A stretch of 64,000 nt of DNA, from assembly GCA_019828565.1 (NCBI GenBank), contig JAHDYR010000053.1, positions 716,172 through 780,171 of the forward strand, in the 5' to 3' direction. The stretch's first letter is position 1, and each line of letters begins with the position of its first letter. The position numbers were made by a program, and so were the translations under genes. Below the pieces are notes generated by a model. It was not told the DNA's origin. It saw only the letters and a list, made by a program, of their open reading frames with translations, and ran no database searches. Below are positions 37,782-61,017 of this stretch, one piece after another. This DNA comes from Carpediemonas membranifera BICM. Its lineage: Eukaryota; Protista; Fornicata.

Positions 37782-37857
37782 TGGTGCGACGGCCGAGACT
37801 CGAACTCGGGTCTCGAGAGCCACAATCTCGTGTCCTACCGCCTAGACTACCATCGCC
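37782..37857 (-). tRNA. tRNA-His(GTG) with genomic G-1 and genomic CCA
   Basis: G GCGATGG TA GTCT AGGCGGT AGGAC A CGAGA TT GTG GC TCTCG AGAC CCGAG TTCGAGT CTCGG CCGTCGC A CCA folds as a cloverleaf. Confidence 0.95.
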
Positions 37858-40800
37858 GTTTAATAGGTCGAAAACCTCCTTTCACGCTGCGTCCAGAGAC
37901 GTTCGCGCCTGTATTCCCGCGCCTGTGTCGACTTAGATGTGTCACCTGTGGGCATCCCTTGTTCGGCTCCTCCGGCTGCTCCCGCAGCCTCGTCGCCGGC
38001 CCCCTCGGCCTCTCCACACGCGAGATGAGATTCCAGCACAAATTATTCCCGCAGCCAGTCCTGCGCTGTGGCCCGCTCGAACTGCGTGACGTAATCCGAG
38101 TAGATCTGGACGTTGCCGTTCCAGATGCAGCGCATCACTTCCTGCTCCAGGAAGCGGCCGGCCCCCACACTCAGGCCGACCATCTTACACAATCTCACAC
38201 ACCAGGACTCGCCCTGGTCATCACTGCACGCTTCGCCAGTGATCTCGCAGGCGGCCGTCAGTAGCTCGGCTGACCAGTTGTGGTACTGCGCGGACTTGTC
38301 TGACTCGGCGTTGGCCTGATCCTTCGAGATCACCACGTCGATGATGATGGGCTCGTTGGCGACCCTGCCCGTGGGAGAGCGACGCAGCGGGACATAGACG
38401 TCGGCGCGAGCGTTACTCTGGTAGGCTGGGTCGGCCGAGTAGCCGCGGGTGCGACTGTTCAAGGCGAACTCCTTGCGGGCAAGCACGTCGTTACTCCACA
38501 GGAAGGAGCGCACGCAGTCACGAACTAGGTCATGACGCATGGTCCTGGCACCCTCCAGGAGCTTAGGACAGGACAACGTGTGCTGCCACGACACATTCGA
38601 GTTACCGCAGAGCGGGCAGCGGACGGTTGAGTCCGTCTCGAACGGTGGTGCGCCGAGGTGTGACCTCACCATGGTGGTGAAAAGGTCGCCACGGATCGGC
38701 GTCGCATAGGAGAGGGGGACAGGGCGGCTTCGGCCGCGAGAATCGGGGTCACCGGGGTCGACTCCACGATCGGGGCGACGGCTGCTGCATGGGCGCGAGA
38801 GATTTTTGTTAGGGTGCGCTGAAGGCCAGTCACGGGCTTGCCGTAGAGCTGGTCCATCCCACGAGGCCAGTCGATGGAGGTGTCGTTGGCGGCGAAGGTT
38901 GATTCGTCGGGGGTTCTGTCCCAGCCCACATCGTGCAGTTGGGCGGTTGCGGCTAGGTAAGCTGCGTCCCAGGTCATGCTCGGGGTGGGCAGGCGGAGGC
39001 CGTTATCGGAGAAATCGAGGCCGAGCCGGAGTGAGTTGTACTTCTCAGGGTCTAGGAGAAGAATTCTCGCAATCGCCGGCGTCAGGACGTTGGACTCGAA
39101 GTTTCGTATGGTCTCACGGTGTTGGGCTGGATCGATAGATCTCATCAAAAATGAAAGCTTCGGCAGAATACACGAACGGATAAGATTCAGAGCAACGGAC
39201 GTCCCATCCGTTCCAATGTCTTCAACCATCGACACCACACTAAGCAACATCTGTTTCTGCTCGTCTAGCTTCGTCATGAGCTGCATCCGTTCCGCTTCGA
39301 TGCCGCCAATGGGAATTCCCACGATTACTCCAGTTGGCGAGCACGTAACGCGAACAGTACGTGCATTCTGCGGCGCGGATGCACAAATCCACTGGCATTT
39401 AGCCGGTTTCATTGTTACGCCAATTTGTCGGAAAGCTTCACAAGCTCCATCGAAAAAAGCCCTGGATGGCGCCGCTAGTCGTCCCCGGGGGGCAATCCAT
39501 GTGACGTCGTCCTGGTAGGCAACCCACTCGCCGCCCCATTTCGTCTTCAGCGTGTCGATGATTGGCCGCATGGCCAGCGTGAACAGAATGGGGGACAGTG
39601 GGTCTCCTTGAGCGATGCCCTCTAGGGACTCGACGACGCGGCCGGACGGCAGAACCAGCCTTCCATTGCCATATACGGCGTCAAAGTACGGGATCGCAAC
39701 AGGGCAGGCCGCGGCGGCTGTGGACCTCAACAATTTGCGGGGCATGGTGCCGTACGCATTGCTGAGATCAACGGCGCAGATGCTTTGGCCACGGGAATAC
39801 GCTTCTTGCAGGCGCAGACCCATAACTTCTGTGCCGCACGACTCACCCCGCCCGTACTGATCATCGAGGAGAGGGTCATCCGCGAGGGACGCGGTAACCG
39901 CCTTGGCTAGTAGCTTGGCTGCTACTCGACGAAGGGCCTCTCCCATGGCGATGGGCCGGACCTCGTCGGGTTTGCCAGGCTTGGGCAGTGGGACGAGGCG
40001 GGAGTGGGCCAGAACGTTTGTGTACGGGACGCCTTCGGCCACATCGACAAGTAGTGGCTTCAGGGCAAGGGCGAAGGCTTCTGGCTTGTGTCTAGCGGCG
40101 AGCTTCAAGTGGAGGAAGCTCATGCCCGACGGACCGGGAGCCGAGTCGGCCGGAAGACTGCTCAGGACATCGATGATGTCCCGAGTTTCGAACTCTACCG
40201 AGGTGAGCGGGGCGAGGGGATGGCGGATTGGGAGGTCATCAAGACTGCCTTGGAAGGGGTCAGCTTGCATCCGAACCATCTTCTCCTCTGCTTCGGCTGG
40301 GGTCATCTGCAGTTCTTCCGAGACCAGGGCACTCATGGACTTGCTGTAGTACCCTCGTCTGGCGTGCTGGTAGGCGAGTCGGCTTCTCGACGTGCTTTCC
40401 ACCTGATTATGGCGGGTCCTCCGGGGGCGAAGTGCTGTTTGTGGGTGCAGCATCACGTCGATGAGACGATCGCGCTTGTCCTCATCTCTGGCTGCCGCGC
40501 AGGCGGTGACCTTTTCGATGAGGGCACGGACATAACCCTTGGTTCCCCTCCGCGTCGGTCGGCTGCGGCCGATGCGAGCCACGTCGGCGGGGTCTGGAAG
40601 GAACCCAAGAGGTCTTGTAGGCGCTCGGGTCTGCCTATTGTTGGTGGCCTGTGTTGCAGGGTGCGCCAATATAGCAGGGAGCGGCAGCCCCAGAGCGATG
40701 TGCGCTGCGGCCGCAACACGGCGTGAGCCATGTTTGGCCACAATCCCGTTCGACGGGAACCGGCGCGAGAAGTGGGGGGGCAGGGTTAGGCCGCCTGCGG

Positions 40801-41820
40801 CACGCAGGAGACACGTCTCAATCTCGATGGCTTGCGCCTTCGTGAGGTGCCTCCTGCGCTCCGTCCCCATGGCTCGCTCGAGCGCGGGGGGCGAGAGAAG
40901 CGTCTGGCGGACTGTGTCGGCATCACGCCAGAGCTCTTCCCGCAGGTCCGGGTGGATGGCGTCCCGTAGGTCACGAGCGAAGGCTGCGATAGCCTGGTTC
41001 ACTCGGACCGTTGGTACGTCCATCCCCCGGTGGTTGGTGTCAGCCACGCTTTGGCCGCCAGGCATGGGAGCGGGTGCCCCGTTATGTCTAGGCTGGACAT
41101 TCGTGGGCCGACTGGTCTCCTCGCTGTTGTTGGGTCTAGGCACGATGCCTGTCTCCTGTGACTGGGCGGGGGTGGGTGGTCCTGAGCCGAGAGGTGGACT
41201 TATCGGGGGTATAAGCTCCGCGATCATCATCTCCTCCCTCTCGATTTGCGTTCCTGATGTTTGTTGGGCTGACGCAACGGGTCCGTTGTCAATCTCATCG
41301 ATGGTGGAGAGCCGTGGGCATCCCGCCGCCCGTAGTTGCTCTAGTAGAGCCCTGCGGCGGCCTAGGGATAGTGTATGGTCACGGCCCTCTGTGTCTATAC
41401 GGATTCGCGAGTCCATTCGGTGCATCAGGAATTGGACGGGATGCGGCGGTAGGTTCCTGATCAACTGGATTGAGCTTAGTACTTGGTGTAATCTCTGCTT
41501 GAAGTCTCGGTTTGAGGGCCTCTGGATCACTGGGAAGAGCGGACTCACAGTGGCAATGAGTTCTTCGGAGACTCTCTTGGTGAAGCGCTCGGGACGTCCT
41601 CTATCTTGAATGAACAGCTTTTTCACAAGCTCTACATCGTTAAAGAGGCGGCGGACTTTCTGGTACGAGGACCAGTGTTCGGCAAAGAGAGATTTTGGTA
41701 CATGCTTACCAAACAGAATGCGCACGGCGTCGAAGATCTGGGAAACAGGATCTTCGAGCTGGATAGTTCCTTCAGTCCCGCTCAGAAGCCGCTCCACGAC
41801 TTCTTTGCTGACAAAGACTG
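37844..41820 (-). mobile_element. CRE-like RLE non-LTR retrotransposon, copy 1 (unit 3977 bp, includes the 14-nt tRNA junction)
   Basis: RT motifs SAPGPSG, RPIAMGEALRR, DLSNAY, GIAQGDPLSP, AYQDD. CCHC knuckle CPLC...HTLSC, RHD, RADV...IDV...DK..Y endonuclease. Abuts tRNA-His. Confidence 0.93.
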
Positions 41821-41830
41821 AGACTACCAT
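38043..41830 (-). CDS. Retrotransposon RT-ZnK-RLE polyprotein (one net frameshift in a C run near 38715)
   Basis: ORFs 38666-41830 and 38043-38672. Copy 3 has one extra G in this run and reads through in frame (LSPLSYATPIRGDLFTTMVRSH). Confidence 0.88.
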
Positions 41831-44800
41831 CGCCGTTTAATAGGTCGAAAACCTCCTTTCACGCTGCGTCCAGAGACGTTCGCGCCTGTATTCCCGCGCC
41901 TGTGTCGACTTAGATGTGTCACCTGTGGGCATCCCTTGTTCGGCTCCTCCGGCTGCTCCCGCAGCCTCGTCGCCGGCCCCCTCGGCCTCTCCACACGCGA
42001 GATGAGATTCCAGCACAAATTATTCCCGCAGCCAGTCCTGCGCTGTGGCCCGCTCGAACTGCGTGACGTAATCCGAGTAGATCTGGACGTTGCCGTTCCA
42101 GATGCAGCGCATCACTTCCTGCTCCAGGAAGCGGCCGGCCCCCACACTCAGGCCGACCATCTTACACAATCTCACACACCAGGACTCGCCCTGGTCATCA
42201 CTGCACGCTTCGCCAGTGATCTCGCAGGCGGCCGTCAGTAGCTCGGCTGACCAGTTGTGGTACTGCGCGGACTTGTCTGACTCGGCGTTGGCCTGATCCT
42301 TCGAGATCACCACGTCGATGATGATGGGCTCGTTGGCGACCCTGCCCGTGGGAGAGCGACGCAGCGGGACATAGACGTCGGCGCGAGCGTTACTCTGGTA
42401 GGCTGGGTCGGCCGAGTAGCCGCGGGTGCGACTGTTCAAGGCGAACTCCTTGCGGGCAAGCACGTCGTTACTCCACAGGAAGGAGCGCACGCAGTCACGA
42501 ACTAGGTCATGACGCATGGTCCTGGCACCCTCCAGGAGCTTAGGACAGGACAACGTGTGCTGCCACGACACATTCGAGTTACCGCAGAGCGGGCAGCGGA
42601 CGGTTGAGTCCGTCTCGAACGGTGGTGCGCCGAGGTGTGACCTCACCATGGTGGTGAAAAGGTCGCCACGGATCGGCGTCGCATAGGAGAGGGGGACAGG
42701 GCGGCTTCGGCCGCGAGAATCGGGGTCACCGGGGTCGACTCCACGATCGGGGCGACGGCTGCTGCATGGGCGCGAGAGATTTTTGTTAGGGTGCGCTGAA
42801 GGCCAGTCACGGGCTTGCCGTAGAGCTGGTCCATCCCACGAGGCCAGTCGATGGAGGTGTCGTTGGCGGCGAAGGTTGATTCGTCGGGGGTTCTGTCCCA
42901 GCCCACATCGTGCAGTTGGGCGGTTGCGGCTAGGTAAGCTGCGTCCCAGGTCATGCTCGGGGTGGGCAGGCGGAGGCCGTTATCGGAGAAATCGAGGCCG
43001 AGCCGGAGTGAGTTGTACTTCTCAGGGTCTAGGAGAAGAATTCTCGCAATCGCCGGCGTCAGGACGTTGGACTCGAAGTTTCGTATGGTCTCACGGTGTT
43101 GGGCTGGATCGACAGATCTCATCAAAAATGAAAGCTTCGGCAGAATACACGAACGGATAAGATTCAGAGCAACGGACGTCCCATCCGTTCCAATGTCTTC
43201 AACCATCGACACCACACTAAGCAACATCTGTTTCTGCTCGTCTAGCTTCGTCATGAGCTGCATCCGTTCCGCTTCGATGCCGCCAATGGGAATTCCCACG
43301 ATTACTCCAGTTGGCGAGCACGTAACGCGAACAGTACGTGCATTCTGCGGCGCGGATGCACAAATCCACTGGCATTTAGCCGGTTTCATTGTTACGCCAA
43401 TTTGTCGGAAAGCTTCACAAGCTCCATCGAAAAAGCCCTGGATGGCGCCGCTAGTCGTCCCCGGGGGGGCAATCCATGTGACGTCGTCCTGGTAGGCAAC
43501 CCACTCGCCGCCCCATTTCGTCTTCAGCGTGTCGATGATTGGCCGCATGGCCAGCGTGAACAGAATGGGGGACAGTGGGTCTCCTTGAGCGATGCCCTCT
43601 AGGGACTCGACGACGCGGCCGGACGGCAGAACCAGCCTTCCATTGCCATATACGGCGTCAAAGTACGGGATCGCAACAGGGCAGGCCGCGGCGGCTGTGG
43701 ACCTCAACAATTTGCGGGGCATGGTGCCGTACGCATTGCTGAGATCAACGGCGCAGATGCTTTGGCCACGGGAATACGCTTCTTGCAGGCGCAGACCCAT
43801 AACTTCTGTGCCGCACGACTCACCCCGCCCGTACTGGTCATCGAGGAGAGGGTCATCCGCGAGGGACGCGGTAACCGCCTTGGCTAGTAGCTTGGCTGCT
43901 ACTCGACGAAGGGCCTCTCCCATGGCGATGGGCCGGACCTCGTCGGGTTTGCCAGGCTTGGGCAGTGGGACGAGGCGGGAGTGGGCCAGAACGTTTGTGT
44001 ACGGGACGCCTTCGGCCACATCGACAAGTAGTGGCTTCAGGGCAAGGGCGAAGGCTTCTGGCTTGTGTCTAGCGGCGAGCTTCAAGTGGAGGAAGCTCAT
44101 GCCCGACGGACCGGGAGCCGAGTCGGCCGGAAGACTGCTCAGGACATCGATGATGTCCCGAGTTTCGAACTCTACCGAGGTGAGCGGGGCGAGGGGATGG
44201 CGGATTGGGAGGTCATCAAGACTGCCTTGGAAGGGGTCAGCTTGCATCCGAACCATCTTCTCCTCTGCTTCGGCTGGGGTCATCTGCAGTTCTTCCGAGA
44301 CCAGGGCACTCATGGACTTGCTGTAGTACCCTCGTCTGGCGTGCTGGTAGGCGAGTCGGCTTCTCGACGTGCTTCCCACCTGATTATGGCGGGTCCTCCG
44401 GGGGCGAAGTGCTGTTTGTGGGTGCAGCATCACGTCGATGAGACGATCGCGCTTGTCCTCATCTCTGGCTGCCGCGCAGGCGGTGACCTTTTCGATGAGG
44501 GCACGGACATAACCCTTGGTTCCCCTCCGCGTCGGTCGGCTGCGGCCGATGCGAGCCACGTCAGCGGGGTCTGGAAGGAACCCAAGAGGTCTTGTAGGCG
44601 CTCGGGTCTGCCTATTGTTGGTGGCCTGTGTTGCAGGGTGCGCCAATATAGCAGGGAGCGGCAGCCCCAGAGCGATGTGCGCTGCGGCCGCAACACGGCG
44701 TGAGCCATGTTTGGCCACAATCCCGTTCGACGGGAACCGGCGCGAGAAGTGGGGGGGCAGGGTTAGGCCGCCTGCGGCACGCAGGAGACACGTCTCAATC

Positions 44801-45798
44801 TCGATGGCTTGCGCCTTCGTGAGGTGCCTCCTGCGCTCCGTCCCCATGGCTCGCTCGAGCGCGGGGGGCGAGAGAAGCGTCTGGCGGACTGTGTCGGCAT
44901 CACGCCAGAGCTCTTCCCGCAGGTCCGGGTGGATGGCGTCCCGTAGGTCACGAGCGAAGGCTGCGATTGCCTGGTTCACTTGGACCGTTGGTACGTCCAT
45001 CCCCCGGTGGTTGGTGTCAGCCACGCTTTGGCCGCCAGGCATGGGAGCGGGTGCCCCGTTATGTCTAGGCTGGACATTCGTGGGCCGACTGGTCTCCCTC
45101 GCTGTCGGTAGGTCTAGGCACGATGCCTGTCTCCTGTGACTGGGCGGGGGTGGGTGGTCCTGAGCCGAGAGGTGGACTTATCGGGGGTATAAGCTCCGCG
45201 ATCATCATCTCCTCCCTCTCGATTTGCGTTCCTGATGTTTGGTGGGCTGACGCAACGGGTCCGTTGTCAATCTCATCGATGGTGGAGAGCCGTGGGCATC
45301 CCGCCGCCCGTAGTTGCTCTAGTAGAGCCCTGCGGCGGCCTAGGGATAGCGTATGGTCACGGCCCTCTGTGTCTATACGGATTCGCGAGTCCATTCGGTG
45401 CATCAGGAATTGGACGGGATGCGGCGGTAGGTTCCTGATCAACTGGATTGAGCTTAGTACTTGGTGTAATCTCTGCTTGAAGTCTCGGTTTGAGGGCCTC
45501 TGGATCACTGGGAAGAGCGGACTCACAGTGGCAATGAGTTCTTCGGAAACTCTCTTGGTGAAGCGCTCGGGACGTCCTCTATCTTGAATGAACAGCTTTT
45601 TCACAAGCTCTACATCGTTAAAGAGGCGGCGGACTTTCTGGTACGAGGACCAGTGTTCGGCAAAGAGAGATTTTGGTACATGCTTACCAAACAGAATGCG
45701 CACGGCGTCGAAGATCTGGGAAACAGGATCTTCGAGCTGGATAGTTCCTTCAGTCCCGCTCAGAAGCCGCTCCACGACTTCTTTGCTGACAAAGACTG
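41821..45798 (-). mobile_element. CRE-like retrotransposon, copy 2
   Basis: Near-identical tandem copy starting at junction agactaccatcgcc. Confidence 0.93.
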
Positions 45799-46582
45799 AG
45801 ACTACCATCGCCGTTTAATAGGTCGAAAACCTCCTTTCACGCTGCGTCCAGAGACGTTCGCGCCTGTATTCCCGCGCCTGTGTCGACTTAGATGTGTCAC
45901 CTGTGGGCATCCCTTGTTCGGCTCCTCCGGCTGCTCCCGCAGCCTCGTCGCCGGCCCCCTCGGCCTTTCCACACGCGAGATGAGATTCCAGCACAAATTA
46001 TTCCCGCAGCCAGTCCTGCGCTGTGGCCCGCTCGAACTGCGTGACGTAATCCGAGTAGATCTGGACGTTGCCGTTCCAGATGCAGCGCATCACTTCCTGC
46101 TCCAGGAAGCGGCCGGCCCCCACACTCAGGCCGACCATCTTACACAATCTCACACACCAGGACTCGCCCTGGTCATCACTGCACGCTTCGCCAGTGATCT
46201 CGCAGGCGGCCGTCAGTAGCTCGGCTGACCAGTTGTGGTACTGCGCGGACTTGTCTGACTCGGCGTTGGCCTGATCCTTCGAGATCACCACGTCGATGAT
46301 GATGGGCTCGTTGGCGACCCTGCCCGTGGGAGAGCGACGCAGCGGGACATAGACGTCGGCGCGAGCGTTACTCTGGTAGGCTGGGTCGGCCGAGTAGCCG
46401 CGGGTGCGACTGTTCAAGGCGAACTCCTTGCGGGCAAGCACGTCGTTACTCCACAGGAAGGAGCGCACGCAGTCACGAACTAGGTCATGACGCATGGTCC
46501 TGGCACCCTCCAGGAGCTTAGGACAGGACAACGTGTGCTGCCACGACACATTCGAGTTACCGCAGAGCGGGCAGCGGACGGT

Positions 46583-46600
46583 TGAGTCCGTCTCGAACGG
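46583..46600 (+). repeat. 18-bp target site duplication of the nested LINE (other copy 53841-53858)
   Basis: Exact duplication of a sequence present once in the uninterrupted copies. Confidence 0.95.
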
Positions 46601-46992
46601 AGAAAGAAAAGAAAGAAATTTATGGTGCTTGGATTCTGACCCCGGACTGAGCTTGTTTCCCGTTGTCTTGGAGCTGAGTGCCCCGGGGTACTGCCTATTT
46701 CCCGTGGCAAACTGGTCAGCAGCGTTTGCCTTGGGCTTTCGGTGCTACTGTCTCCGCGGAAAGCCGATTCCAATCGCCCCAGAGGCCCTGCGGCCATCTC
46801 CGTGCAAATATGCTTTCCTGTCTCCCTGAAAGTCCGGCAACTATCCGGGGAGCCTGGGGGTCTGTCCTCGGGGCATTGACAGGCAGGATCGTCCTGCAGG
46901 ACCTTGACTATGACACTCCTTGCTTCCCTGCAGTCCTTGTAGAGCCGTTCAGCCACGGCACCCTCTCGTCTGTCCGGTTCCCCAATTCCATG
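46601..46992 (-). CDS. Possible small ORF3 at the LINE 3' end
   Basis: Open frame ERLYKDCREARSVIVKVLQDDPACQC... downstream of ORF2, after a GC-rich spacer. Tentative. Confidence 0.3.
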
Positions 46993-47288
46993 CCCCCTCG
47001 ACTCTGTTAAGAAGCCTACCCGAAGGCGGGGAAAGTGACTAAGTCCATGCTGTCTACCCCGGTTAGGTGGCGTGGGTCAGGGCATGGGTGGTGTACCCCC
47101 AGGCACTAGGCCTGGTTGTCCTGTTACCCCTTACAACATTTCGCTTGCACTACATGTCCTTGGTTTCCCATGTCGTTAACAAGGGCGGCAGGGGCACCTG
47201 TGCCCCTCCGACCCCCGTGGCCAGTCCCTGCAGTTTCCTTGGGGTCCCAACGAGTGGTGCAACCATATGAATATGGATTTCCTTGACC

Positions 47289-50200
47289 TTATCCTTGCTC
47301 TGTCCTTGTTGCATGTCCTTTCTTTCTTATTTCTGGTCTGTCCTTCCTGTTATTTCCTTGCAGTCGTTCCTTCCCTTGCTTTGGTTCCTGGCTACCGGGA
47401 TACGTGGGGCCTTTCCTCACTGATCCCAGGAGCTTAGCACCCAGCGAGGGTGGTCCATGGCTGATTCCTTGTCCATCCCTTCCCGGTCCTGGAGTCAGGG
47501 GTTCATGACATGCTTCTATTCCACCTTGAAGCTGTTGTAAACCTTTGCCAGTTCCCGTAGTCCTGCCGTGAGGCCTTCCCAAATGTCCTCCGAGCCCCAT
47601 ATTATTAGTTGCTGTAATTCTAGGATGGGTCTTTCCTGGTACCATTCGCCCTGGGGGCCCTGCCTTACTTCCAAGTCCTTAGTTTTTGTGCTTCGCTGCT
47701 GTCCACAGCTTTGTCCAAGCTTCTCCCCTGTCTACTGCCGGGCATTCACAGATTATGTGCGCTGCCGATCCTAGCCTCTGGCCCTCTGCCCACTCCCCTG
47801 ATCATTTCCTGCTTCCTTGCTGGTCCTGGCTTTTCCCTAATGATCCTGTAGAACAGGCTCACCTCCGACTCCTCCGAGCATAGGGGGCATAGTCTGCTAA
47901 TTTCTCTCTTCAGGTCAGCGCCTTGGGCCAGCTCTGTGATGGCTCTCATAGGGCCCTCCCTCTCTCTGCCGACGATGGGGATGGGCTGACATTGGCTGCA
48001 ATGGATACAATTCTCTTCCATTCCGCCCTGCTTTGCCCCTTCCCAGCCTTTCGGTCTACCGTAGGCTTACCTTGCAGACACTTGCTTAATTTCCTTGTCC
48101 CCATGATTTCCATTAGTCCTAGTGCCGTACGGCTTTTGCACCGCTTCATCCACCCCCTCCCTGATCGTTTCCATGCCATAATCCAGTAGCGCTGGTTTAG
48201 GGGCTCCCTCTCTGGTGCCCTCCAGTAGATGCTGCACTCTCTCCCTAGCTTCCCACATAACCGTGCCCCGCCCCCATTCTCTGTTTCTGACTGGTATATC
48301 CTGGTCCCTGTAGTTGACTATCCTTTTGACTGCCAGCCATTCCATGTGTGCCTGGAGGTCCACCCATCCATTCATCAGCCTCATGGCTGCGCCCCCTCCC
48401 GGTCCTGTTCCTGCCATGATTCCCTGCCAGTCATTCCAGATCCTTCTACCTCCCGGTGCGTTCCCCCACACCTCGACTCCGAAGAGGATCCTGGGCCATA
48501 TATATATTTCCAGTAGTAGCCTGCTCGCTAGTGCTGGCATGTTTGCCCTGGTCCACCCTGCCCATCTCACCAGTCTCTTGTACCTTTCGCTCTGCTCCTG
48601 TTTCCGCCTTATGCAGGCCGACATAGGGTCCTTCCCACTTGCGATCCATAATCCCAGGTATCTCGCCTCCTTCTCTGGCAGTAGTGTTACCCCCTCGATC
48701 CTGACTAGGGCTGTTCTGTCCACGCTAATCATTACATTCTTCTGGGCGTTCACCCTCATTTCATGCTCTCTGATTATGTCCACCATTATGTTGGCGACCA
48801 TCTGGCTATGCTCCGGTTTGCTCCCTGTGACCGCAGTGTCATCCACAAACATGGTAAGTGCTGCCGGTAGTCGGTCGCTGAGGTGGCTCGTGGTCCTTGG
48901 CGGTTCTCTGATGTCGTACCGTTCTCCCTTGATTTTCTTTCTGGCCAGGTGGGGCCAGTTAGCCATGAACAGCACAAACAATGTCGGTGCCAGGACGCAC
49001 CCTTGCTTAACTCCCCTGTTGGTTCTTTCCCATGCCTTTGCCCCCTTGACTGATATCCAGGTTTCCTTTATTGTGCCTTGAATTGCCCTGATCAAGTGCT
49101 CCTCCACCCCCATACCCTGTAGCTTATCCATGAGAATGTCCCTTGGTACCGTGTCATATGCCTTCTCGATGTCCAGAAAGATTGACGTGGTCTCACCCCC
49201 TCCTGGTGCCGCTGCACAATGTACTGTATCTGCTGGATGACGTCCCTGTCTGACTGGAAACCAGCCTGTTCTCTTGGTATGAACCTTTTCGTTGCTGCTT
49301 CCAGACGTATCTTGAGCAATCTACCATAGACCCTGTACAGCAGTGGTGTCAAGGATATTGGTCTATATGATTCCGGCTTGACCCTTGGCTTCCCCTGTCT
49401 TGTGTATGGCCGACACTGTGGCATACTTCCATGCTTTGGGTACGTCGCCCTCCCTGTAGACCCTGTTGATGAGCCTCGTCACTTCCCTAAGGCCTTTCTC
49501 ATCCAGCTCTCTCAGCATGTCTCCAGATGTGAGGTCAGGCCCTGGTGCGGTGTCCCTCCTGATCCTTTTGATTGCGGCTTTGACCTCGCTTTCCTTGAAC
49601 TCATTTCCGTCCCTGCCCCTCCATGTCTTCCAGGTGGGTTCCCTGCCTCTGCTGACTCTAGCATACTGTTGCAAGAGGATCTCGCTGATGGCCGCCTTGT
49701 CCGTGGTTATCACTCCGTCCTTGAGGAGGCTCTCCGGCATTCCCTTGTATTGGTTGTCACACCTCCACCTTCTGATGGCAGCTTCCACTGAGGCCCTTGA
49801 GGCCCTATACCCCCTTTTGCACTTCTGCTGATGTCGGCCACCCATTTGGCCCTGCGCTCTCCCCAGTATTTCTCCAGCTCCTCTTTCATCCTTTCCTTCC
49901 TGGTCCTGTTGCCTATTTCTGTCCATGGGGTTCGCTGGAGTTCGCTCCACACTCCGTTCCCGAACACTTTGTCCCTTGCCTTTGCTCCCCTGTTGTTCAC
50001 TGGGTCGCCCATGCATGCTCTTATAGTCTCTTCCCATTGGTCCGAGCTCTTGATCCTGTTCAGCTTTGAGACTGTGACTGGCCCCTCCTTCTTTTCATGG
50101 GCCAGGTGTGCACCTCGGGTATGGCCAGAGCCACGTCTCGCTCACTTCTGCCATAGTACCGTTGTTCCTTCCATGCTAGTGTGATTCCATTGTGTGCTGA

Positions 50201-50959
50201 GCCCCATACCCCGACCTTCTGAGACTCTACCACCTCAATCTCCGCCCCCTGGATTCCTGGTGTTGTCACTGCAAAGTCCGGGGTTGATGTTCCTGATGTG
50301 AGCGTCCCAGACTTGGGTATGATGGCTTTGAGCCTGTGCTTCTCCATCATATCCTTCCACCGGGTGGATCTTTCCATCTGGCCTGGGTCGATGTTCCAGT
50401 CTCCCATAATTATGGCCTCCATGCTCCCTTTCATGTCCATGATCTTCTGTATAGTGTCCCTGAATCCATCCTTCTCCTGCTTGCTGTGGCCGGATGGAGG
50501 GCCATACACGTTGATGACTAGTATGTCCCTGCCGGTTCTCATTATGCTGGCTTGCACTCTTCCCGATAGGCTGTCCGTTATGCCGATGTCCCACTTTGCA
50601 GTTGCGTGTGGGCTCACTATCGTGCCGATGCCTTCCCTTGTTCCCTTCCATCTTGGCGCAGGTTCGTCATTGCCTGCTATGCCTAGTTGTCGGTTGATGC
50701 GGTGCTGACTTTTGACATCCGCCTTTCGTTTTTCGTTGGCTAAGACCAGGTCCTCTTCCGTCTCCCTCCCTGCTAGTGCGTAGTCAAGGTCCATGAAGCA
50801 ATGAACCCTCGTATTCGCCGTTCTCCATGTCTCTTGTATGAGTACTGCCTCTATGTCCTTCAACCTTAGCTGAATCGCCGTTGCCATAGACGCCGTGAAG
50901 TCCTTTCCTCTTCCTATGTGTCCCTCTGTGTTCAGACTAAGTATCTTGTAGGTTACCAT
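47289..50959 (-). CDS. LINE ORF2: APE endonuclease + reverse transcriptase + CCHC finger (several frameshifts)
   Basis: ILSLNTEG, LIQETW, INVYGP, MGDWN, SAH; APGPD, YRPISLT, QAGF, DIEKAYD, GVKQGCVLAPTLF, FVDD; CPLC...HIICEC. Confidence 0.88.
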
Positions 50960-51279
50960 TGCCTTTGTCCTGTTTCCTTATCCTGCGAATTCCCAGAATT
51001 TGGGAGCCCCAGCTTCCCGCTCCTCTCCTGCTATCCTTGTCCTAACAAGGGGCCTAGATGCCGGTCTCGGTGACCCTTGTCAGGCCAACCTTGTTACCAC
51101 CTGGTGACCTTCCATTCTTCGGGCAGGGTACTTAGGAGGGGGACGATATGACGTGACCCCCCTTTGGCTGCCGCTACAGCCTACCGGCAGTGCATTTCAG
51201 CTAATGCCGGGCCCTGGGTGGGAGCCAGGGCTTGTGAATTATAAAGAAAATGTTGCTTGTTCCTTGAAAGAATACTGCT

Positions 51280-53839
51280 TTACCATGTCCTTACTCCTCC
51301 TCCGTGGACTCCCCCACTGCCGCTGCAGCTGTCCTCGGCCTGACTCACTTGCTGTCCTTGTAGACTCTGCATTACCGTGATGAACTGGGTCATCAGGTCC
51401 ATGGGTGAGATCTGCTTGGCCTTCTTAGCCTTCTTGTGCTTGTGCCGGGGGATCGTGGGCTTCTCCTTGCTGGGCTTAGTCGCGACGCCGGAGAGCACCA
51501 ACCTTCCGTGGCCTTGCTCTTGCATGAGTCGGGCAGCCTTGAGCGCTGAGATCTCTTGTTGCGCCTCTGCCAACTGCTTTCGGAGCCGCAGCTTCTCCGA
51601 GTCCATGCCGGTTGCCTGTCTGCTTCCAGACTCCCAGTCCATGTCCTCTTCGTGCCTGCTTCTCTTTCCGCTGTCCGAGTCCATGATCCTACTCGTGCTG
51701 CCCTCCTTGCGCTTGAGCGTCGTGGAGGAAGAGTGATCCTTGCTGTTGTCCATGCCTCCCTCTGAGCCTCTACCGGCCCAGGTGTTCCCGCTGAACGAGC
51801 CTCTCATCTGCGTTCCCGTGTTGTCCTGTCTCTCCCTGTCGTCTCCTCCGTGGTTACGATCCGAGGTCCTGTTCATGTTACCAGCTCTGTCGCCGGTTCT
51901 GTCGTCAGCTCTGACACCAGCTCTACCGCCGGCTCCGTGTCCTACCCTTCTGTCCTCTTCCCTGTCTCCATGCTGGTCGTGATGTCCTTGATCCGCGTCC
52001 TGGCCGAAGTGCCTGCCCACCATCCTGGTGCTAATCCGCCTCGCCTTTTCCTCCAGGCCGTTGTCGAAGAACCTACTTTGGTATGGCTGTTCGGACTTTC
52101 CGTCGATGGTGGGGACATACGTGATGCCTGGGACATTGACTGTGTTGGCTCTGGGCTCGTCCGGGATAGCTGCCGAGACTAGTCTGGCCCCTTCCTTGCG
52201 CATGCGGCTTAGGATGGTCCCAGCCTCGCTGACCCTGACCATGCCCCAGTCTCTCGGGATGAAGCTCGCCCCTAGGGTGATCCTACCCCTGTTCCTGGGG
52301 GCCTTGACGTTGACTATGACCTTCTCATAGTCCCTGAGGCTCTCTGCTAGGTCGTCGCAGCCCCAGACTCCTTGATGAGCCGTAGCCTCCTTCGAGGGCC
52401 ACCACTCGTATAGCATGGCCATGGTTATGATGTCCTCCTCCCTTGCTGCCCCTAGGCCCTTCCTGACGCGTACCATGCGGAGCTGGTTAGCCGTGGCTCT
52501 TCCATGATGGTCCATAGCGGGCTTCTCTCCAGTACACCTTCGTTGTCCATGATTGTGAGGGGGGGCAGTAAGATGCCCTTCATGCCCAACAGAACCTCCC
52601 CGAACCCGAAGCCGATGCCGAAGCGGTGTCCGTTGTCCGGGACTACGAGGATCCTGTCGCCGACTTCCCTGCTGACGTCCCTTGCGTCCCCGATCGGGTA
52701 CGTGCCGAAGATCTCAAAGGTGTCCCTCCTTGTCGCGAATTCCGGGCCTCCCATGATATCCATGCCCGGCTCCGCCTTCCCGACTGCTTCCATGGTCTTG
52801 TCGAGTGCCTTACCCATGTAGTGGTAGACGTCTGGGGTGCTCATCCTCTCCTTGCATAGGGCCCTGATCCTGGCTGTGAAGACTACTGTATCCGCCAACC
52901 CACAGTGGTAGCAACCCGCGGTGTGTCTGTGGTACGGACAGACTCCCTTGGGCTCGCTCCTGTTCTGCCATCCATTTGACCATGTTGTTACTGCTTCCAG
53001 GTAGTTGGCCTTGTCGAGGTTGTCCCTGAGGTTTTGGCCAGCCTCCTCCTTGCCGTTGTTCTCCAGGATCTCTGGTAGCTTCTTCTCGTCCACCAGCCTA
53101 GCTTGGAAGAATTCCCTGGTTCCTTGCTCCAGTCCATTTGTGGGGTTCGTGAGGAGGAAGCTTTCCATCTCCACCCCCTTTGCATACATGATTATCTTCC
53201 AACCCTCCGACCTTTCGATCCTTGCCAGCTGAGCCGCCAGGCGGTTGGCCCAGTCCCTGAAAGTATGTATGTGCTTCTCATACTCGATCGGCGGCCGCCC
53301 CGTCCCGACCTCCACGAAGGTGGCCGGCGGCAGCCCCGTCACTGCCCATGCCGTGTACCTCGCTTGGTCCATGCTTGCTGCCGGTATGTCCTGGTAATAC
53401 AGGCCATGCCCGTGTCCAAGAATGTCCCCAGTGCTGAGGTCAAAGAGTACGATCCCGCCCTCAACCGGGATGGCAGGATCCCTGCCTTCTTGACGCCAGG
53501 GTCTGCGCACTCGAAGTCGATGGCTCCGATCACCAGTCGTTTCTCCTTGTCCTTTCTAGGCATCCTCGGCGGCTGGCTGCTGACCTTGTTTGAGTCGACC
53601 TCCTCGTCCTGGTCGATCTTGCCTTGGTTGGCCCCGACCATGTCCTTGTTCACTTCCAGGAGGCTGTCGTCGAGGCTTCTTCTGCCGGGCATGGTGGCCT
53701 GCTGGCGTCGTTCCTCCTTGTCCTTGACATGTTGCTCCTCGTCTCCGTCGATGACCGTGCTAGCGGACGACCTGTCCAGATCGGCATGTTCGTCCCTATT
53801 GCTGCGGACCGAGGTGGCCTTGAGCACTTCCAGCCTCAC
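51280..53839 (-). CDS. LINE ORF1 with Maelstrom-like DEDDh nuclease domain and basic/coiled-coil tail (two frameshifts)
   Basis: Joined frames give GAIDFEC...IPVEGGIV...VTGLP...CPYH...HCGLAD, followed by a low-complexity region and a coiled coil. Confidence 0.65.
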
Positions 53840-56800
53840 CTGAGTCCGTCTCGAACGGTGGTGCGCCGAGGTGTGACCTCACCATGGTGGTGAAAAGGTC
53901 GCCACGGATCGGCGTCGCATAGGAGAGGGGGGACAGGGCGGCTTCGGCCGCGAGAATCGGGGTCACCGGGGTCGACTCCACGATCGGGGCGACGGCTGCT
54001 GCATGGGCGCGAGAGATTTTTGTTAGGGTGCGCTGAAGGCCAGTCACGGGCTTGCCGTAGAGCTGGTCCATCCCACGAGGCCAGTCGATGGAGGTGTCGT
54101 TGGCGGCGAAGGTTGATTCGTCGGGGGTTCTGTCCCAGCCCACATCGTGCAGTTGGGCGGTTGCGGCTAGGTAAGCTGCGTCCCAGGTCATGCTCGGGGT
54201 GGGCAGGCGGAGGCCGTTATCGGAGAAATCGAGGCCGAGCCGGAGTGAGTTGTACTTCTCAGGGTCTAGGAGAAGAATTCTCGCAATCGCCGGCGTCAGG
54301 ACGTTGGACTCGAAGTTTCGTATGGTCTCACGGTGTTGGGCTGGATCGACAGATCTCATCAAAAATGAAAGCTTCGGCAGAATACACGAACGGATAAGAT
54401 TCAGAGCAACGGACGTCCCATCCGTTCCAATGTCTTCAACCATCGACACCACACTAAGCAACATCTGTTTCTGCTCGTCTAGCTTCGTCATGAGCTGCAT
54501 CCGTTCCGCTTCGATGCCGCCAATGGGAATTCCCACGATTACTCCAGTTGGCGAGCACGTAACGCGAACAGTACGTGCATTCTGCGGCGCGGATGCACAA
54601 ATCCACTGGCATTTAGCCGGTTTCATTGTTACGCCAATTTGTCGGAAAGCTTCACAAGCTCCATCGAAAAAGCCCTGGATGGCGCCGCTAGTCGTCCCCG
54701 GGGGGCAATCCATGTGACGTCGTCCTGGTAGGCAACCCACTCGCCGCCCCATTTCGTCTTCAGCGTGTCGATGATTGGCCGCATGGCCAGCGTGAACAGA
54801 ATGGGGGACAGTGGGTCTCCTTGAGCGATGCCCTCTAGGGACTCGACGACGCGGCCGGACGGCAGAACCAGCCTTCCATTGCCATATACGGCGTCAAAGT
54901 ACGGGATCGCAACAGGGCAGGCCGCGGCGGCTGTGGACCTCAACAATTTGCGGGGCATGGTGCCGTACGCATTGCTGAGATCAACGGCGCAGATGCTTTG
55001 GCCACGGGAATACGCTTCTTGCAGGCGCAGACCCATAACTTCTGTGCCGCACGACTCACCCCGCCCGTACTGGTCATCGAGGAGAGGGTCATCCGCGAGG
55101 GACGCGGTAACCGCCTTGGCTAGTAGCTTGGCTGCTACTCGACGAAGGGCCTCTCCCATGGCGATGGGCCGGACCTCGTCGGGTTTGCCAGGCTTGGGCA
55201 GTGGGACGAGGCGGGAGTGGGCCAGAACGTTTGTGTACGGGACGCCTTCGGCCACATCGACAAGTAGTGGCTTCAGGGCAAGGGCGAAGGCTTCTGGCTT
55301 GTGTCTAGCGGCGAGCTTCAAGTGGAGGAAGCTCATGCCCGACGGACCGGGAGCCGAGTCGGCCGGAAGACTGCTCAGGACATCGATGATGTCCCGAGTT
55401 TCGAACTCTACCGAGGTGAGCGGGGCGAGGGGATGGCGGATTGGGAGGTCATCAAGACTGCCTTGGAAGGGGTCAGCTTGCATCCGAACCATCTTCTCCT
55501 CTGCTTCGGCTGGGGTCATCTGCAGTTCTTCCGAGACCAGGGCACTCATGGACTTGCTGTAGTACCCTCGTCTGGCGTGCTGGTAGGCGAGTCGGCTTCT
55601 CGACGTGCTTCCCACCTGATTATGGCGGGTCCTCCGGGGGCGAAGTGCTGTTTGTGGGTGCAGCATCACGTCGATGAGACGATCGCGCTTGTCTTCATCT
55701 CTGGCTGCCGCGCAGGCGGTGACCTTTCCGATGAGGGCACGGACATAACCCTTGGTTCCCCTCCGCGTCGGTCGGCTGCGGCCGATGCGAGCCACGTCGG
55801 CGGGGTCTGGAAGGAACCCAAGAGGTCTTGTAGGCGCTCGGGTCTGCCTATTGTTGGTGGCCTGTGTTGCAGGGTGCGCCAATATAGCAGGGAGCGGCAG
55901 CCCCAGAGCGATGTGCGCTGCGGCCGCAACACGGCGTGAGCCATGTTTGGCCACAATCCCGTTCGACGGGAACCGGCGCGAGAAGTGGGGGGGCAGGGTT
56001 AGGCCGCCTGCGGCACGCAGGAGACACGTCTCAATCTCGATGGCTTGCGCCTTCGTGAGGTGCCTCCTGCGCTCCGTCCCCATGGCTCGCTCGAGCGCGG
56101 GGGGCGAGAGAAGCGTCTGGCGGACTGTGTCGGCATCACGCCAGAGCTCTTCCCGCAGGTCCGGGTGGATGGCGTCCCGTAGGTCACGAGCGAAGGCTGC
56201 GATAGCCTGGTTCACTCGGACCGTTGGTACGTCCATCCCCCGGTGGTTGGTGTCAGCCACGCTTTGGCCGCCAGGCATGGGGAGCGGGTGCCCCGTTATG
56301 TCTAGGCTGGACATTCGTGGGCCGACTGGTCTCCCTCGCTGTCGTTAGGTCTAGGCACGATGCCTGTCTCCTGTGACTGGGCGGGGGTGGGTGGTCCTGA
56401 GCCGAGAGGTGGACTTATCGGGGGTATAAGCTCCGCGATCATCATCTCCTCCCTCTCGATTTGCGTTCCTGATGTTTGGTGGGCTGACGCAACGGGTCCG
56501 TTGTCAATCTCATCGATGGTGGAGAGCCGTGGGCATCCCGCCGCCCGTAGTTGCTCTAGTAGAGCCCTGCGGCGGCCTAGGGATAGCGTATGGTCACGGC
56601 CCTCTGTGTCTATACGGATTCGCGAGTCCATTCGGTGCATCAGGAATTGGACGGGATGCGGCGGTAGGTTCCTGATCAACTGGATTGAGCTTAGTACTTG
56701 GTGTAATCTCTGCTTGAAGTCTCGGTTTGAGGGCCTCTGGATCACTGGGAAGAGCGGACTCACAGTGGCAATGAGTTCTTCGGAGACTCTCTTGGTGAAG

Positions 56801-57036
56801 CGCTCGGGACGTCCTCTATCTTGAATGAACAGCTTTTTCACAAGCTCTACATCGTTATAGAGGCGGCGGACTTTCTGGTACGAGGACCAGTGTTCGGCAA
56901 AGAGAGATTTTTGGTACATGCTTACCAAACAGAATGCGCACGGCGTCGAAGATCTGGGAAACAGGATCTTCGAGCTGGATAGTTCCTTCAGTCCCGCTCA
57001 GAAGCCGCTCCACGACTTCTTTGCTGACAAAGACTG

Positions 57037-60000: not shown

Positions 60001-61017
60001 GGAGACACGTCTCAATCTCGATGGCTTGCGCCTTCGTGAGGTGCCTCCTGCGCTCCGTCCCCATGGCTCGCTCGAGCGCGGGGGGGCGAGAAGCGTCTGG
60101 CGGACTGTGTCGGCATCACGCCAGAGCTCTTCCCGCAGGTCCGGGTGGATGGCGTCCCGTAGGTCACGAGCGAAGGCTGCGATAGCCTGGTTCACTCGGA
60201 CCGTTGGTACGTCCATCCCCCGGTGGTTGGTGTCAGCCACGCTTTGGCCGCCAGGCATGGGAGCGGGTGCCTCGTTATGTCTAGGCTGGACATTCGTGGG
60301 CCGACTGGTCTCCCTCGCTGTCGTTAGGTCTAGGCACGATGCCTGTCTCCTGTGACTGGGCGGGGGTGGGTGGTCCTGAGCCGAGAGGTGGACTTATCGG
60401 GGGGTATAAGCTCCGCGATCATCATCTCCTCCCTCTCGATTTGCGTTCCTGATGTTTGGTGGGCTGACGCAACGGGTCCGTTGTCAATCTCATCGATGGT
60501 GGAGAGCCGTGGGCATCCCGCCGCCCGTAGTTGCTCTAGTAGAGCCCTGCGGCGGCCTAGGGATAGCGTATGGTCACGGCCCTCTGTGTCTATACGGATT
60601 CGCGAGTCCATTCGGTGCATCAGGAATTGGACGGGATGCGGCGGTAGGTTCCTGATCAACTGGATTGAGCTTAGTACTTGGTGTAATCTCTGCTTGAAGT
60701 CTCGGTTTGAGGGCCTCTGGATCACTGGGAAGAGCGGACTCACAGTGGCAATGAGTTCTTCGGAGACTCTCTTGGTGAAGCGCTCGGGACGTCCTCTATC
60801 TTGAATGAACAGCTTTTTTTCACAAGCTCTACATCGTTAAAGAGGCGGCGGACTTTCTGGTACGAGGACCAGTGTTCGGCAAAGAGAGATTTTGGTACAT
60901 GCTTACCAAACAGAATGCGCACGGCGTCGAAGATCTGGGAAACAGGATCTTCGAGCTGGATAGTTCCTTCAGTCCCGCTCAGAAGCCGCTCCACGACTTC
61001 TTTGCTGACAAAGACTG
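57037..61017 (-). mobile_element. CRE-like retrotransposon, copy 4
   Basis: Near-identical tandem copy with the same junctions. Confidence 0.93.

What the first reader, a model, noticed from the sequence alone, without database searches (positions are those of the whole stretch)
41815..41840. Element has no 5' UTR and takes its start codon from the duplicated tRNA target
Seen: the polyprotein ORF begins ATG GTA GTC T|CA GTC (MVVSV...). ATGGTAGTCT is tRNA-His acceptor/D-stem sequence, and element-specific sequence starts only after it. The next in-frame Met is more than 130 codons downstream. This holds at all four internal junctions, so it is not random 5' truncation. Inference: translation depends on correct on-target insertion, which would act as a built-in target-fidelity checkpoint. 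Transcription must come from the upstream copy's 3' UTR or the tRNA 5' flank. The ~185-nt 3' UTR has no poly(A).
Basis: partly seen in the sequence, partly recalled or inferred. Interest (0 to 1): 0.85.

Follow-up and report, generated by a model that had tools for sequence, protein, structure and literature searches.

The report
Retrotransposon borrows start codon from tRNA
In the free-living protist Carpediemonas membranifera, a jumping gene that stacks up just in front of histidine-tRNA genes has no start codon of its own and uses an ATG in the 13 bases of tRNA gene that are duplicated at each insertion, as related elements at other tRNA genes also do.

Summary
Observation confirmed. The finding marks a junction in a head-to-tail array of a 3.98-kb RT + restriction-like-endonuclease non-LTR retrotransposon of Carpediemonas membranifera. 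The element inserts after nt 13 of tRNA-His and duplicates nt 1-13. All 22 element 5' ends in the genome follow this 13-mer. Its ATG is the only in-frame start for an N-terminal domain conserved from residue 6; the next Met is 136. The genome holds at least seven related tRNA-targeting families. The ATG lies wholly in the duplicated target, in frame, in the His, Glu and Arg families and in two tRNA-Ser relatives from other datasets; it straddles the junction in Met. Ala, Thr and Leu keep their own ATG 0, 2 and 17 nt after the duplication. Best reading: near-leaderless mRNAs include the duplication, so an in-frame target ATG is used first and the element's own ATG can be lost. The 'fidelity checkpoint' is not supported, since own-ATG families sit at their tRNAs too. 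There is no RNA evidence. Only 5 of 13 copies read in frame past codon 237 (probably nanopore errors). The scan noted these families, and this idea without follow-up, on other DNA.

The parts
37782..37856 (-). Intact tRNA-His(GTG), the target gene, regenerated at the 3' end of the array (CCA encoded; G-1 at 37857)
   Evidence: ARAGORN; sequence
37844..37856 (-). tRNA nt 1-13 = 3' copy of the target-site duplication
41821..41833 (-). Target-site duplication (tRNA nt 1-13) at the copy 2/copy 1 junction; holds the start codon at 41830-41828
45799..45811 (-). Same duplication at the copy 3/copy 2 junction, ATG at 45808-45806
57037..57049 (-). Same duplication at the copy 4/copy 3 junction, ATG at 57046-57044
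61018..61030 (-). Same duplication at the copy 5/copy 4 junction, ATG at 61027-61025
41834..41842 (-). AT-rich 3' end of the upstream copy (TATTAAA + CG): in-frame stop at 41839-41837; candidate transcription initiator (inferred)
37857..41820 (-). Element copy 1 (next to the tRNA; probably the youngest)
38666..41830 (-). Copy 1 ORF from the target-derived ATG, 1054 aa as assembled: N-terminal domain, linker, RT
41240..41815 (-). N-terminal domain, residues 6-197, homologous to residues 3-194 of the tRNA-Ala family protein; no zinc finger, no known family
39383..39985 (-). Reverse transcriptase core (Pfam RVT_1, E 1.7e-12; YQDD at 39517-39506)
38043..38672 (-). CCHC knuckle and restriction-like endonuclease (C-x2-C-x8-H-x3-C-x10-RHD...E...RAD...D); one base out of frame with RT in most assembled copies, in frame in copy 3 and in sister families
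37857..38042 (-). 3' UTR of copy 1, 186 nt, no poly(A)
41834..45798 (-). Element copy 2 (99.6% identical; extra G near codon 237)
45812..57036 (-). Element copy 3, interrupted by a nested LINE
46601..53840 (-). Unrelated 7.2-kb APE-type LINE inserted in copy 3, with an 18-bp duplication
57050..61017 (-). Element copy 4
61031..64000 (-). Element copy 5, cut by the window end, which is a 100-N scaffold gap

Best explanation
This is a site-specific non-LTR retrotransposon (RT + CCHC + restriction-like endonuclease, very probably one ORF of about 1260 aa) that works like CRE/SLACS and R2 elements. SHOWN: it sits at tRNA-His genes flanked by a duplication of tRNA nt 1-13 (up to 15 bp); the gene downstream stays whole; copies stack head to tail; the duplicated bases hold the only in-frame ATG ahead of a conserved N-terminal domain. 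INFERRED from target-primed reverse transcription as known for R2: the enzyme nicks the bottom strand at about tRNA +1 and the top strand between nt 13 and 14, and filling in makes the duplication. INFERRED: the RNA is a Pol II transcript that starts a few bases upstream of, or at, the duplication, most likely at the AT-rich end of the upstream copy, so its leader is only about 3-15 nt and contains the target bases. The ribosome takes the first AUG. In this lineage leaders are near zero, so a target ATG had to be in frame or be harmful, and once it was in frame the element's own ATG could be lost (His, Glu, Ser), is still there as a spare (Arg), or is kept where the target has none (Ala, Thr, Leu). 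Target bases on the RNA would also let the cDNA end anneal to the target overhang, which explains the uniform 5' junctions. The effect is a dependence on the target for a start codon that arose by redundancy and loss, not a device selected for fidelity.
For: 22/22 His and 58 Glu 5' ends follow the target 13-mer. Same cut position after nt 13 in His, Glu and Ala; 12 nt from the tRNA 3' end, antisense, in Thr, Met, Leu, Arg and Ser. 5'-truncated copies carry the duplication (L058, L090), and Thr junctions follow the local isoacceptor's sequence. Every ATG lying wholly in a duplication is in the ORF frame: His, Glu, Arg, Ser; 1/81 if the four were independent. His N-terminus aligns with the Ala protein from residue 6, and the Ala Met falls where the His junction is. 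12 of 20 shared SNPs are synonymous and 13 of 20 fall in third positions of this frame. Out-of-frame ATGs at -8 (Ala), -11 and -16 (Ser) suggest a very short leader. Single full-length ORFs in Leu, Thr, P0011 and P0012. R2 precedent for target bases on the RNA giving uniform junctions (PMC3774820; PMC11371274).
Against: No RNA or protein data: no RNA run was served and the contigs laid do not cover the junction. Only 5 of 13 His copies read past codon 237 in frame; 5 stop at exactly 247 aa because of one extra G. In Leu an ATG that straddles the upstream copy and the duplication opens a 5-codon ORF, so not every junction ATG is productive. In L069 the frame stays open to an ATG 18 codons upstream in the neighbouring element. 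The Arg frame is supported only by 67 open codons and weak similarity. No empty tRNA-His site exists in the assembly, so the cut sites are read from junctions only. The families are related, so the 1/81 figure overstates independence.
Confidence: 0.72

Rival explanations
1. Fidelity checkpoint: the element is built so that only correctly targeted copies regain an ATG from target DNA and can be translated; this is selected to keep the family on target.
For: The duplication comes from target DNA. No off-target full-length copy among 22 His and 58 Glu 5' ends. His, Glu and Ser have no own ATG near the 5' end.
Against: Ala, Thr and Leu keep their own ATG, and every junction of theirs that I read was at the tRNA target. 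The mRNA must hold the ATG, so full-length cDNA can bring it along (R2 makes tandem copies of RNA-borne target sequence, PMC3774820). An off-target copy would probably lack a promoter anyway. The series from own ATG to spare ATG to target ATG is what passive loss predicts.
Confidence: 0.15
2. Two-ORF element: the target ATG starts only a 247-aa ORF1, and RT is made from Met256 or by frameshifting, so RT itself does not depend on the target ATG.
For: 9 of 16 copies have the extra G near codon 237 and 5 of 13 stop at 247 aa; an ATG follows at codon 256.
Against: The G is not linked to SNP haplotypes. The same GG-to-GGG slip appears at codon 4-5 in 5 of 57 Glu 5' ends. Sister families and both outside relatives have one ORF. 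The assembly is R9.4 nanopore.
Confidence: 0.15
3. The 13 nt are the element's own 5' end, captured once and now carried on its RNA, so the ATG is element-encoded and only looks like a duplication.
For: Full-length 5' junctions are perfectly uniform; R2 of earwig and sow bug carry fixed target-derived ends (PMC3774820).
Against: Exact identity to each family's own tRNA with no drift; present at 5'-truncated copies; follows the local tRNA-Thr isoacceptor. Both origins may operate together.
Confidence: 0.1
4. The junction ATG is incidental: translation starts internally (Met136, or a non-AUG start as proposed for R2 from my own knowledge), or a 5' exon is spliced onto the CAG that begins the His and Glu element sequence.
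For: No expression data exclude it; CAG lies at the start of both elements.
Against: Residues 6-135 are conserved with the Ala protein; two out-of-frame ATGs precede Met136; no ribozyme or stable structure at the 5' end (z = -0.83); the CAG phases differ between His and Glu; in-frame target ATGs recur in four target types.
Confidence: 0.07

Closest known systems
CRE clade (CRE1, CRE2, SLACS, CZAR; MoTeR and FoTeR have similar endonuclease motifs)
   Same: RT followed by CCHC and restriction-like endonuclease with RHD...E...RAD motif (PMC12857005); site-specific; target-site duplications; mostly one ORF (PMC12278014). NCBI names one Glu-family protein 'SLACS'.
   Different: Target is tRNA, not the spliced-leader gene; no poly(A); no N-terminal zinc finger; no 5' UTR (FoTeRs have 492-3366 bp); start codon in the duplication.
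tRNA-gene-specific RLE elements NeSL-1_TV (tRNA-Pro), LIN15_SM (tRNA-Arg), LIN25_SM (tRNA-Glu)
   Same: RLE-type non-LTR elements specific for tRNA genes (PMC4640811).
   Different: These are NeSL-related and from Trichomonas and planaria (hosts partly from my own knowledge). No target-derived start codon is mentioned in the passages read. The Carpediemonas elements form their own clade among the sequences I could gather.
R2 elements whose RNA begins in upstream 28S sequence
   Same: Target sequence at the RNA 5' end gives uniform 5' junctions (PMC3774820); closest solved structures are R2 proteins (E 5e-10).
   Different: R2 uses 28S rDNA, Pol I co-transcription and an HDV-like ribozyme; the target bases do not supply the start codon; no ribozyme was found here.
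HeT-A of Drosophila and GilM/GilT of Giardia (from my own knowledge; papers not held)
   Same: Head-to-tail arrays; in HeT-A the 3' end of the upstream copy is the promoter of the next.
   Different: Telomeric, not tRNA-specific; they have their own 5' UTR and start codon.

Membership tests
RLE-type non-LTR retrotransposon | RT domain with YxDD | tested here: met
   Pfam RVT_1 E 1.7e-12, YQDD at residue 772
RLE-type non-LTR retrotransposon | CCHC knuckle and PD-(D/E)xK-type endonuclease downstream of RT | tested here: met
   C-x2-C-x8-H-x3-C-x10-RHD...E-x20-RAD...D, compared with the motif in PMC12857005
RLE-type non-LTR retrotransposon | No LTRs; target-site duplication; 5'-truncated copies | tested here: met
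   13-15 bp duplication; truncated copies in the Glu and Thr families
CRE clade | RT phylogeny groups with named CRE, SLACS, CZAR | not tested
   No named reference proteins could be fetched; the quick tree only shows a Carpediemonas clade with SH-aLRT 100
CRE clade | Insertion in spliced-leader RNA genes (trypanosomatid members) | tested here: not met
   Target is tRNA-His
CRE clade | Poly(A) tail (general, not strict) | tested here: not met
   3' end is AAA+CG
CRE clade | One or two N-terminal zinc fingers (most copies) | tested here: not met
   No C2H2-like pattern in residues 1-480; no Pfam hit
CRE clade | Single ORF | tested here: inconclusive
   Broken by indels in every His copy examined; single in sister families
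NeSL/Utopia-related tRNA-specific elements | Insertion at a fixed site of a tRNA gene | tested here: met
NeSL/Utopia-related tRNA-specific elements | RT phylogeny within the NeSL clade; N-terminal zinc fingers | tested here: inconclusive
   Phylogeny not tested; zinc fingers absent
R2 clade | 28S rDNA target | tested here: not met
R2 clade | HDV-like ribozyme at the 5' end | tested here: not met
   No Rfam match to E 5 at the His junction or six sister junctions; fold z -0.83. A divergent ribozyme could be missed.
R2 clade | Target sequence present at the RNA 5' end | not testable with these tools
   No RNA run available

The most novel reading that the evidence does not exclude
The target-derived start codon is a functional licence: the RNA's own copy of the ATG is not rebuilt into the new insertion, so each copy becomes translatable only through a correct staggered cut at a tRNA gene with an in-frame ATG. 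That would filter out off-target copies and lock the His, Glu and Ser families to their tRNA isotypes, a coupling of integration geometry to translation that I did not find described for any retrotransposon.
Probability: 0.22. Interest if true: 0.87.

Novelty: new variant of a known kind. Interest (0 to 1): 0.72.

Why it matters
Non-LTR retrotransposons normally need a 5' UTR for promoter, ribozyme or translation signals. Here a whole clade has shrunk it to 0-17 nt, and several families begin their protein inside host tRNA sequence, on the sense or antisense strand. It shows how a target-site duplication can become a coding part of the element. It gives a natural series (own ATG, spare ATG, straddling ATG, target ATG) to test how mRNA 5' ends, first-AUG choice and second-strand joining are linked. 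It also adds compact enzymes without zinc fingers that insert at tRNA genes without destroying them, of interest for R2-type gene insertion tools.

Tried and rejected
Random 5' truncation: rejected, 22/22 identical junctions and no longer 5' variant in the genome. Off-target copies: the two non-tandem His 5' ends (C24:340884, C44:14784) first looked like off-target insertions carrying the ATG, but both flanks are ends of DIRS/tyrosine-recombinase retroelements of the kind that sit beside tRNA genes here. A Glu junction on C40 that seemed to carry a 24-nt RNA leader is a tandem junction with a small insert. Extra 13-mers at C8, C13 and C16 are chance matches. Programmed frameshift or stop-restart between RT and endonuclease: disfavoured, because copies with six C at that run are in frame and match the Glu-family motif, whose copies L022, L026, L020 and L024 have one frame. 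Pol III transcription: disfavoured by four sense T runs. Ribozyme: none found. Reads: only scraps, none over the junction or the indels. Distant relatives (25-35% identity) from metagenomes show no tRNA nearby. N-terminal domain: no family in Pfam, the Atlas or the protein search. The careful tree did not finish; only the quick tree is used. Two papers I wanted (a 2025 survey of site-specific retrotransposons, the Giardia GilM/GilT paper) are not held, so the novelty claim rests on ten searches of open literature and does not cover Repbase.
Full report
Setting. The genome has 24,237,836 bases in 69 scaffolds, matching Carpediemonas membranifera (24.2 Mb, 69 contigs, PMC8516963); the closest database proteins are named for that species, and one NCBI model (KAG9391670.1) already starts at the same Met. 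The assembly used R9.4 nanopore and Illumina reads.

Observation. From 37857 to the window end, on the - strand, lie five head-to-tail copies of a 3977-bp unit, 99.2-99.9% identical, directly upstream of an intact tRNA-His(GTG) at 37782-37856. Each junction carries tRNA nt 1-13; nt 4-6 are ATG and open the ORF (MVVSV...). Element sequence starts after nt 13. The next in-frame Met is 136, two out-of-frame ATGs lie before it, an in-frame stop lies three codons upstream, and the nearest upstream ATG is at -99. The 3' UTR is 186 nt without poly(A). Genome-wide there are 26 copies of the 13-mer against 0.73 expected: 22 before element 5' ends, 3 as intact tRNA-His genes, 1 chance match. Of 24 element 3' ends, 23 are followed by the 13-mer. 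Every tRNA-His gene found has an element upstream, so no empty site is available.

Protein. Copy 1 encodes an N-terminal domain, a linker, RT (Pfam RVT_1, YQDD) and, one base out of frame, a CCHC knuckle with a restriction-like endonuclease. Copies differ by many indels, mostly in or beside short homopolymer runs. The RT-endonuclease break is probably an assembly error: two copies with one more C are in frame and then match the paralogous motif, and four Glu-family copies have one frame. A second site near codon 237 has an extra G in 9 of 16 copies. It is not linked to SNP haplotypes and the same slip occurs in 5 of 57 Glu 5' ends, so error is likely but unproven. Of 13 copies with a 5' end, 5 read past it in frame, 5 stop at 247 aa and 3 stop earlier. 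In either case the junction ATG starts the N-terminal domain.

Is the N-terminus real? The frame has no stop for 237 codons (chance about 1e-4; the other frames have 15 and 8 stops). 13 of 20 shared SNPs are at third positions and 12 are synonymous. Residues 6-197 align with residues 3-194 of the tRNA-Ala family protein (28%, E 3e-20), and the Ala start Met falls at His residue 4, the junction codon. So conserved coding sequence runs to the first element-encoded bases, and the only ATG ahead of it is the tRNA's.

A radiation in one genome. Paralog positions set against tRNA positions and small fetches show at least seven families, which form one clade with two outside proteins (quick tree, SH-aLRT 100). 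Sense families duplicate tRNA nt 1-13: His (ATG at 4-6), Glu-CTC (ATG at 7-9, frame open 337 codons, next Met 67; 58 5' ends, all after the 13-mer) and Ala-AGC (ATG is the first codon after the duplication). Antisense families duplicate 12 nt from the tRNA 3' end: Thr (own ATG after 2 nt), Leu (after 17 nt), Met (A from the target, TG from the element) and Arg (ATG inside the duplication, own Met five codons later). Two relatives from other datasets, L069 (GCA_002919055.1; possibly the C. frisia bin, an inference) and L070 (SRR31444219), are about 43% identical in protein yet share a 12-mer at the ORF start. It is the reverse complement of the tRNA-Ser 3' end as seen in this genome, and holds an ATG in frame. 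In L070 that ATG opens the whole 1100-aa ORF, with no other Met in the first 200 residues. All ATGs wholly inside a duplication (His, Glu, Arg, Ser) are in frame. One counter-example: in Leu an ATG straddling the upstream copy and the duplication gives a 5-codon ORF.

Is the 13-mer a true duplication? Yes, by sister families. A Glu copy on C52 has a tRNA-type flank, the 13-mer and then internal RT sequence. A 236-bp Thr fragment on C68 also follows the 12-mer, and junctions at the Thr-CGT gene carry that gene's variant while the one read at the Thr-AGT gene carries the other. The last point is suggestive only, as donors may come from the same array.

Mechanism. Shown: target, duplication, array, frame, conservation. 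Inferred from R2 biochemistry: a nick near tRNA +1 primes reverse transcription, a second nick after nt 13 leaves a 13-nt overhang, the tRNA is regenerated downstream and is hit again, so arrays grow next to the tRNA. The tRNA-adjacent copies on C39 and C6 share private SNPs, as expected of the youngest copies. Inferred: the mRNA is a Pol II transcript whose short leader includes the duplication. Four sense T runs argue against Pol III, no ribozyme was found, every family ends in an A-rich stretch just before the duplication, and out-of-frame ATGs 8-16 nt upstream in Ala and Ser suggest the cap lies closer than that. Very short leaders are known from Giardia (my own knowledge). With target bases on the RNA, cDNA can anneal to the target, which in R2 gives uniform 5' junctions (PMC3774820; PMC11371274). 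An ATG in those bases is read first; it must be in frame, and then the element's own ATG is dispensable. The family series fits this passive route.

The checkpoint idea. It is not excluded but is not needed. Own-ATG families also sit at their targets, no off-target full-length copy exists to test it, and R2 shows that RNA-borne target bases can be inserted with the element. What does follow is a constraint on retargeting: His, Glu and Ser elements cannot move to a tRNA without an in-frame ATG unless they regain one.

Known relatives and novelty. It works like CRE/SLACS elements (RT, RHD...RAD endonuclease, duplications; PMC12278014, PMC12857005) but lacks their target, poly(A) and zinc fingers, and clade membership was not tested. 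tRNA-specific RLE elements are known (NeSL-1_TV, LIN15_SM, LIN25_SM; PMC4640811). I found no paper on these Carpediemonas elements or on a start codon supplied by a target-site duplication, within the limits of the library. The scan's notes list the His, Glu, Ala, Thr and Leu families on other DNA, and one unfollowed note has the same start-codon idea; I read them after finding the families and they are not independent evidence.

Verdict. Real feature, new variant of a known kind, interest 0.72. The sequence case for a target-derived start codon is strong and repeated across families; expression evidence is absent; the fidelity function is speculative.

Noticed in passing
L040:3885-5800, L042:785-5183, L086, L087, L038:6700-8200, L069:5291-8040: DIRS/tyrosine-recombinase retroelements sit directly beside tRNA genes or array junctions: both non-tandem His 5' flanks are their ends, one complete element with split direct repeats lies exactly in a tandem junction with CG on both sides, and tRNA-Ser and tRNA-His 3' flanks carry them too. 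They may be tRNA-targeted themselves.
   Followed up: partly
L064, L054, L058, L073, L066, L083, L093, L077: Upstream flanks are nearly identical between different tRNA genes (Glu with Met, Glu with Thr, Glu with Ser, Ala with Arg); probably ends of those mobile elements, possibly a shared upstream promoter.
   Followed up: partly
L073, L054, L076, L077: Antisense families end in an A-rich stretch that reads as a T run just after the tRNA on the other strand, so the element may supply the tRNA's Pol III terminator (clear TTTT in Thr, Met and Arg, only TTT in Leu).
   Followed up: no
window 13380-15884: AAA ATPase ORF interrupted by a Hom_end-type Hint domain (Pfam E 7e-15): candidate intein in a eukaryotic AAA protein.
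   Followed up: no
window 46601-53840: APE-type LINE nested in copy 3 with an 18-bp duplication; extra ORFs at its 5' end have no Pfam hit.
   Followed up: partly
window 37782-37857: tRNA-His gene encodes both G-1 and CCA in DNA; same at the C6 and C7 genes.
   Followed up: partly
L068 (G000 C15:1093-1571): 478-bp internally deleted Glu-family copy with both ends intact, like the SIDE non-autonomous elements of R2.
   Followed up: no
window 64000 and L035:1173-2120: The window ends at a 100-N gap; beyond it the same tRNA-His locus appears again in an error-rich version, so array length and copy number are unresolved.
   Followed up: partly
L039, L041, L043, L044, L045: Elements with short terminal inverted repeats, probably DNA transposons, are repeatedly inserted in His-family copies; a 5' part on C44 and a 3' part on C6 break at the same base, hinting at rearrangement or misassembly.
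   Followed up: no
window 24774-27242: Telomerase reverse transcriptase gene (822 aa).
   Followed up: no
L053:949-1401: The Glu family has a variable array of about 93-bp (31-codon) repeats in the linker after its N-terminal domain, like the internal repeats of some CRE elements.
   Followed up: no
window 38170-38473: Two short contigs of a microbial-mat metagenome (run X1) match the endonuclease region at 99% or more, so the element exists in another sample.
   Followed up: no
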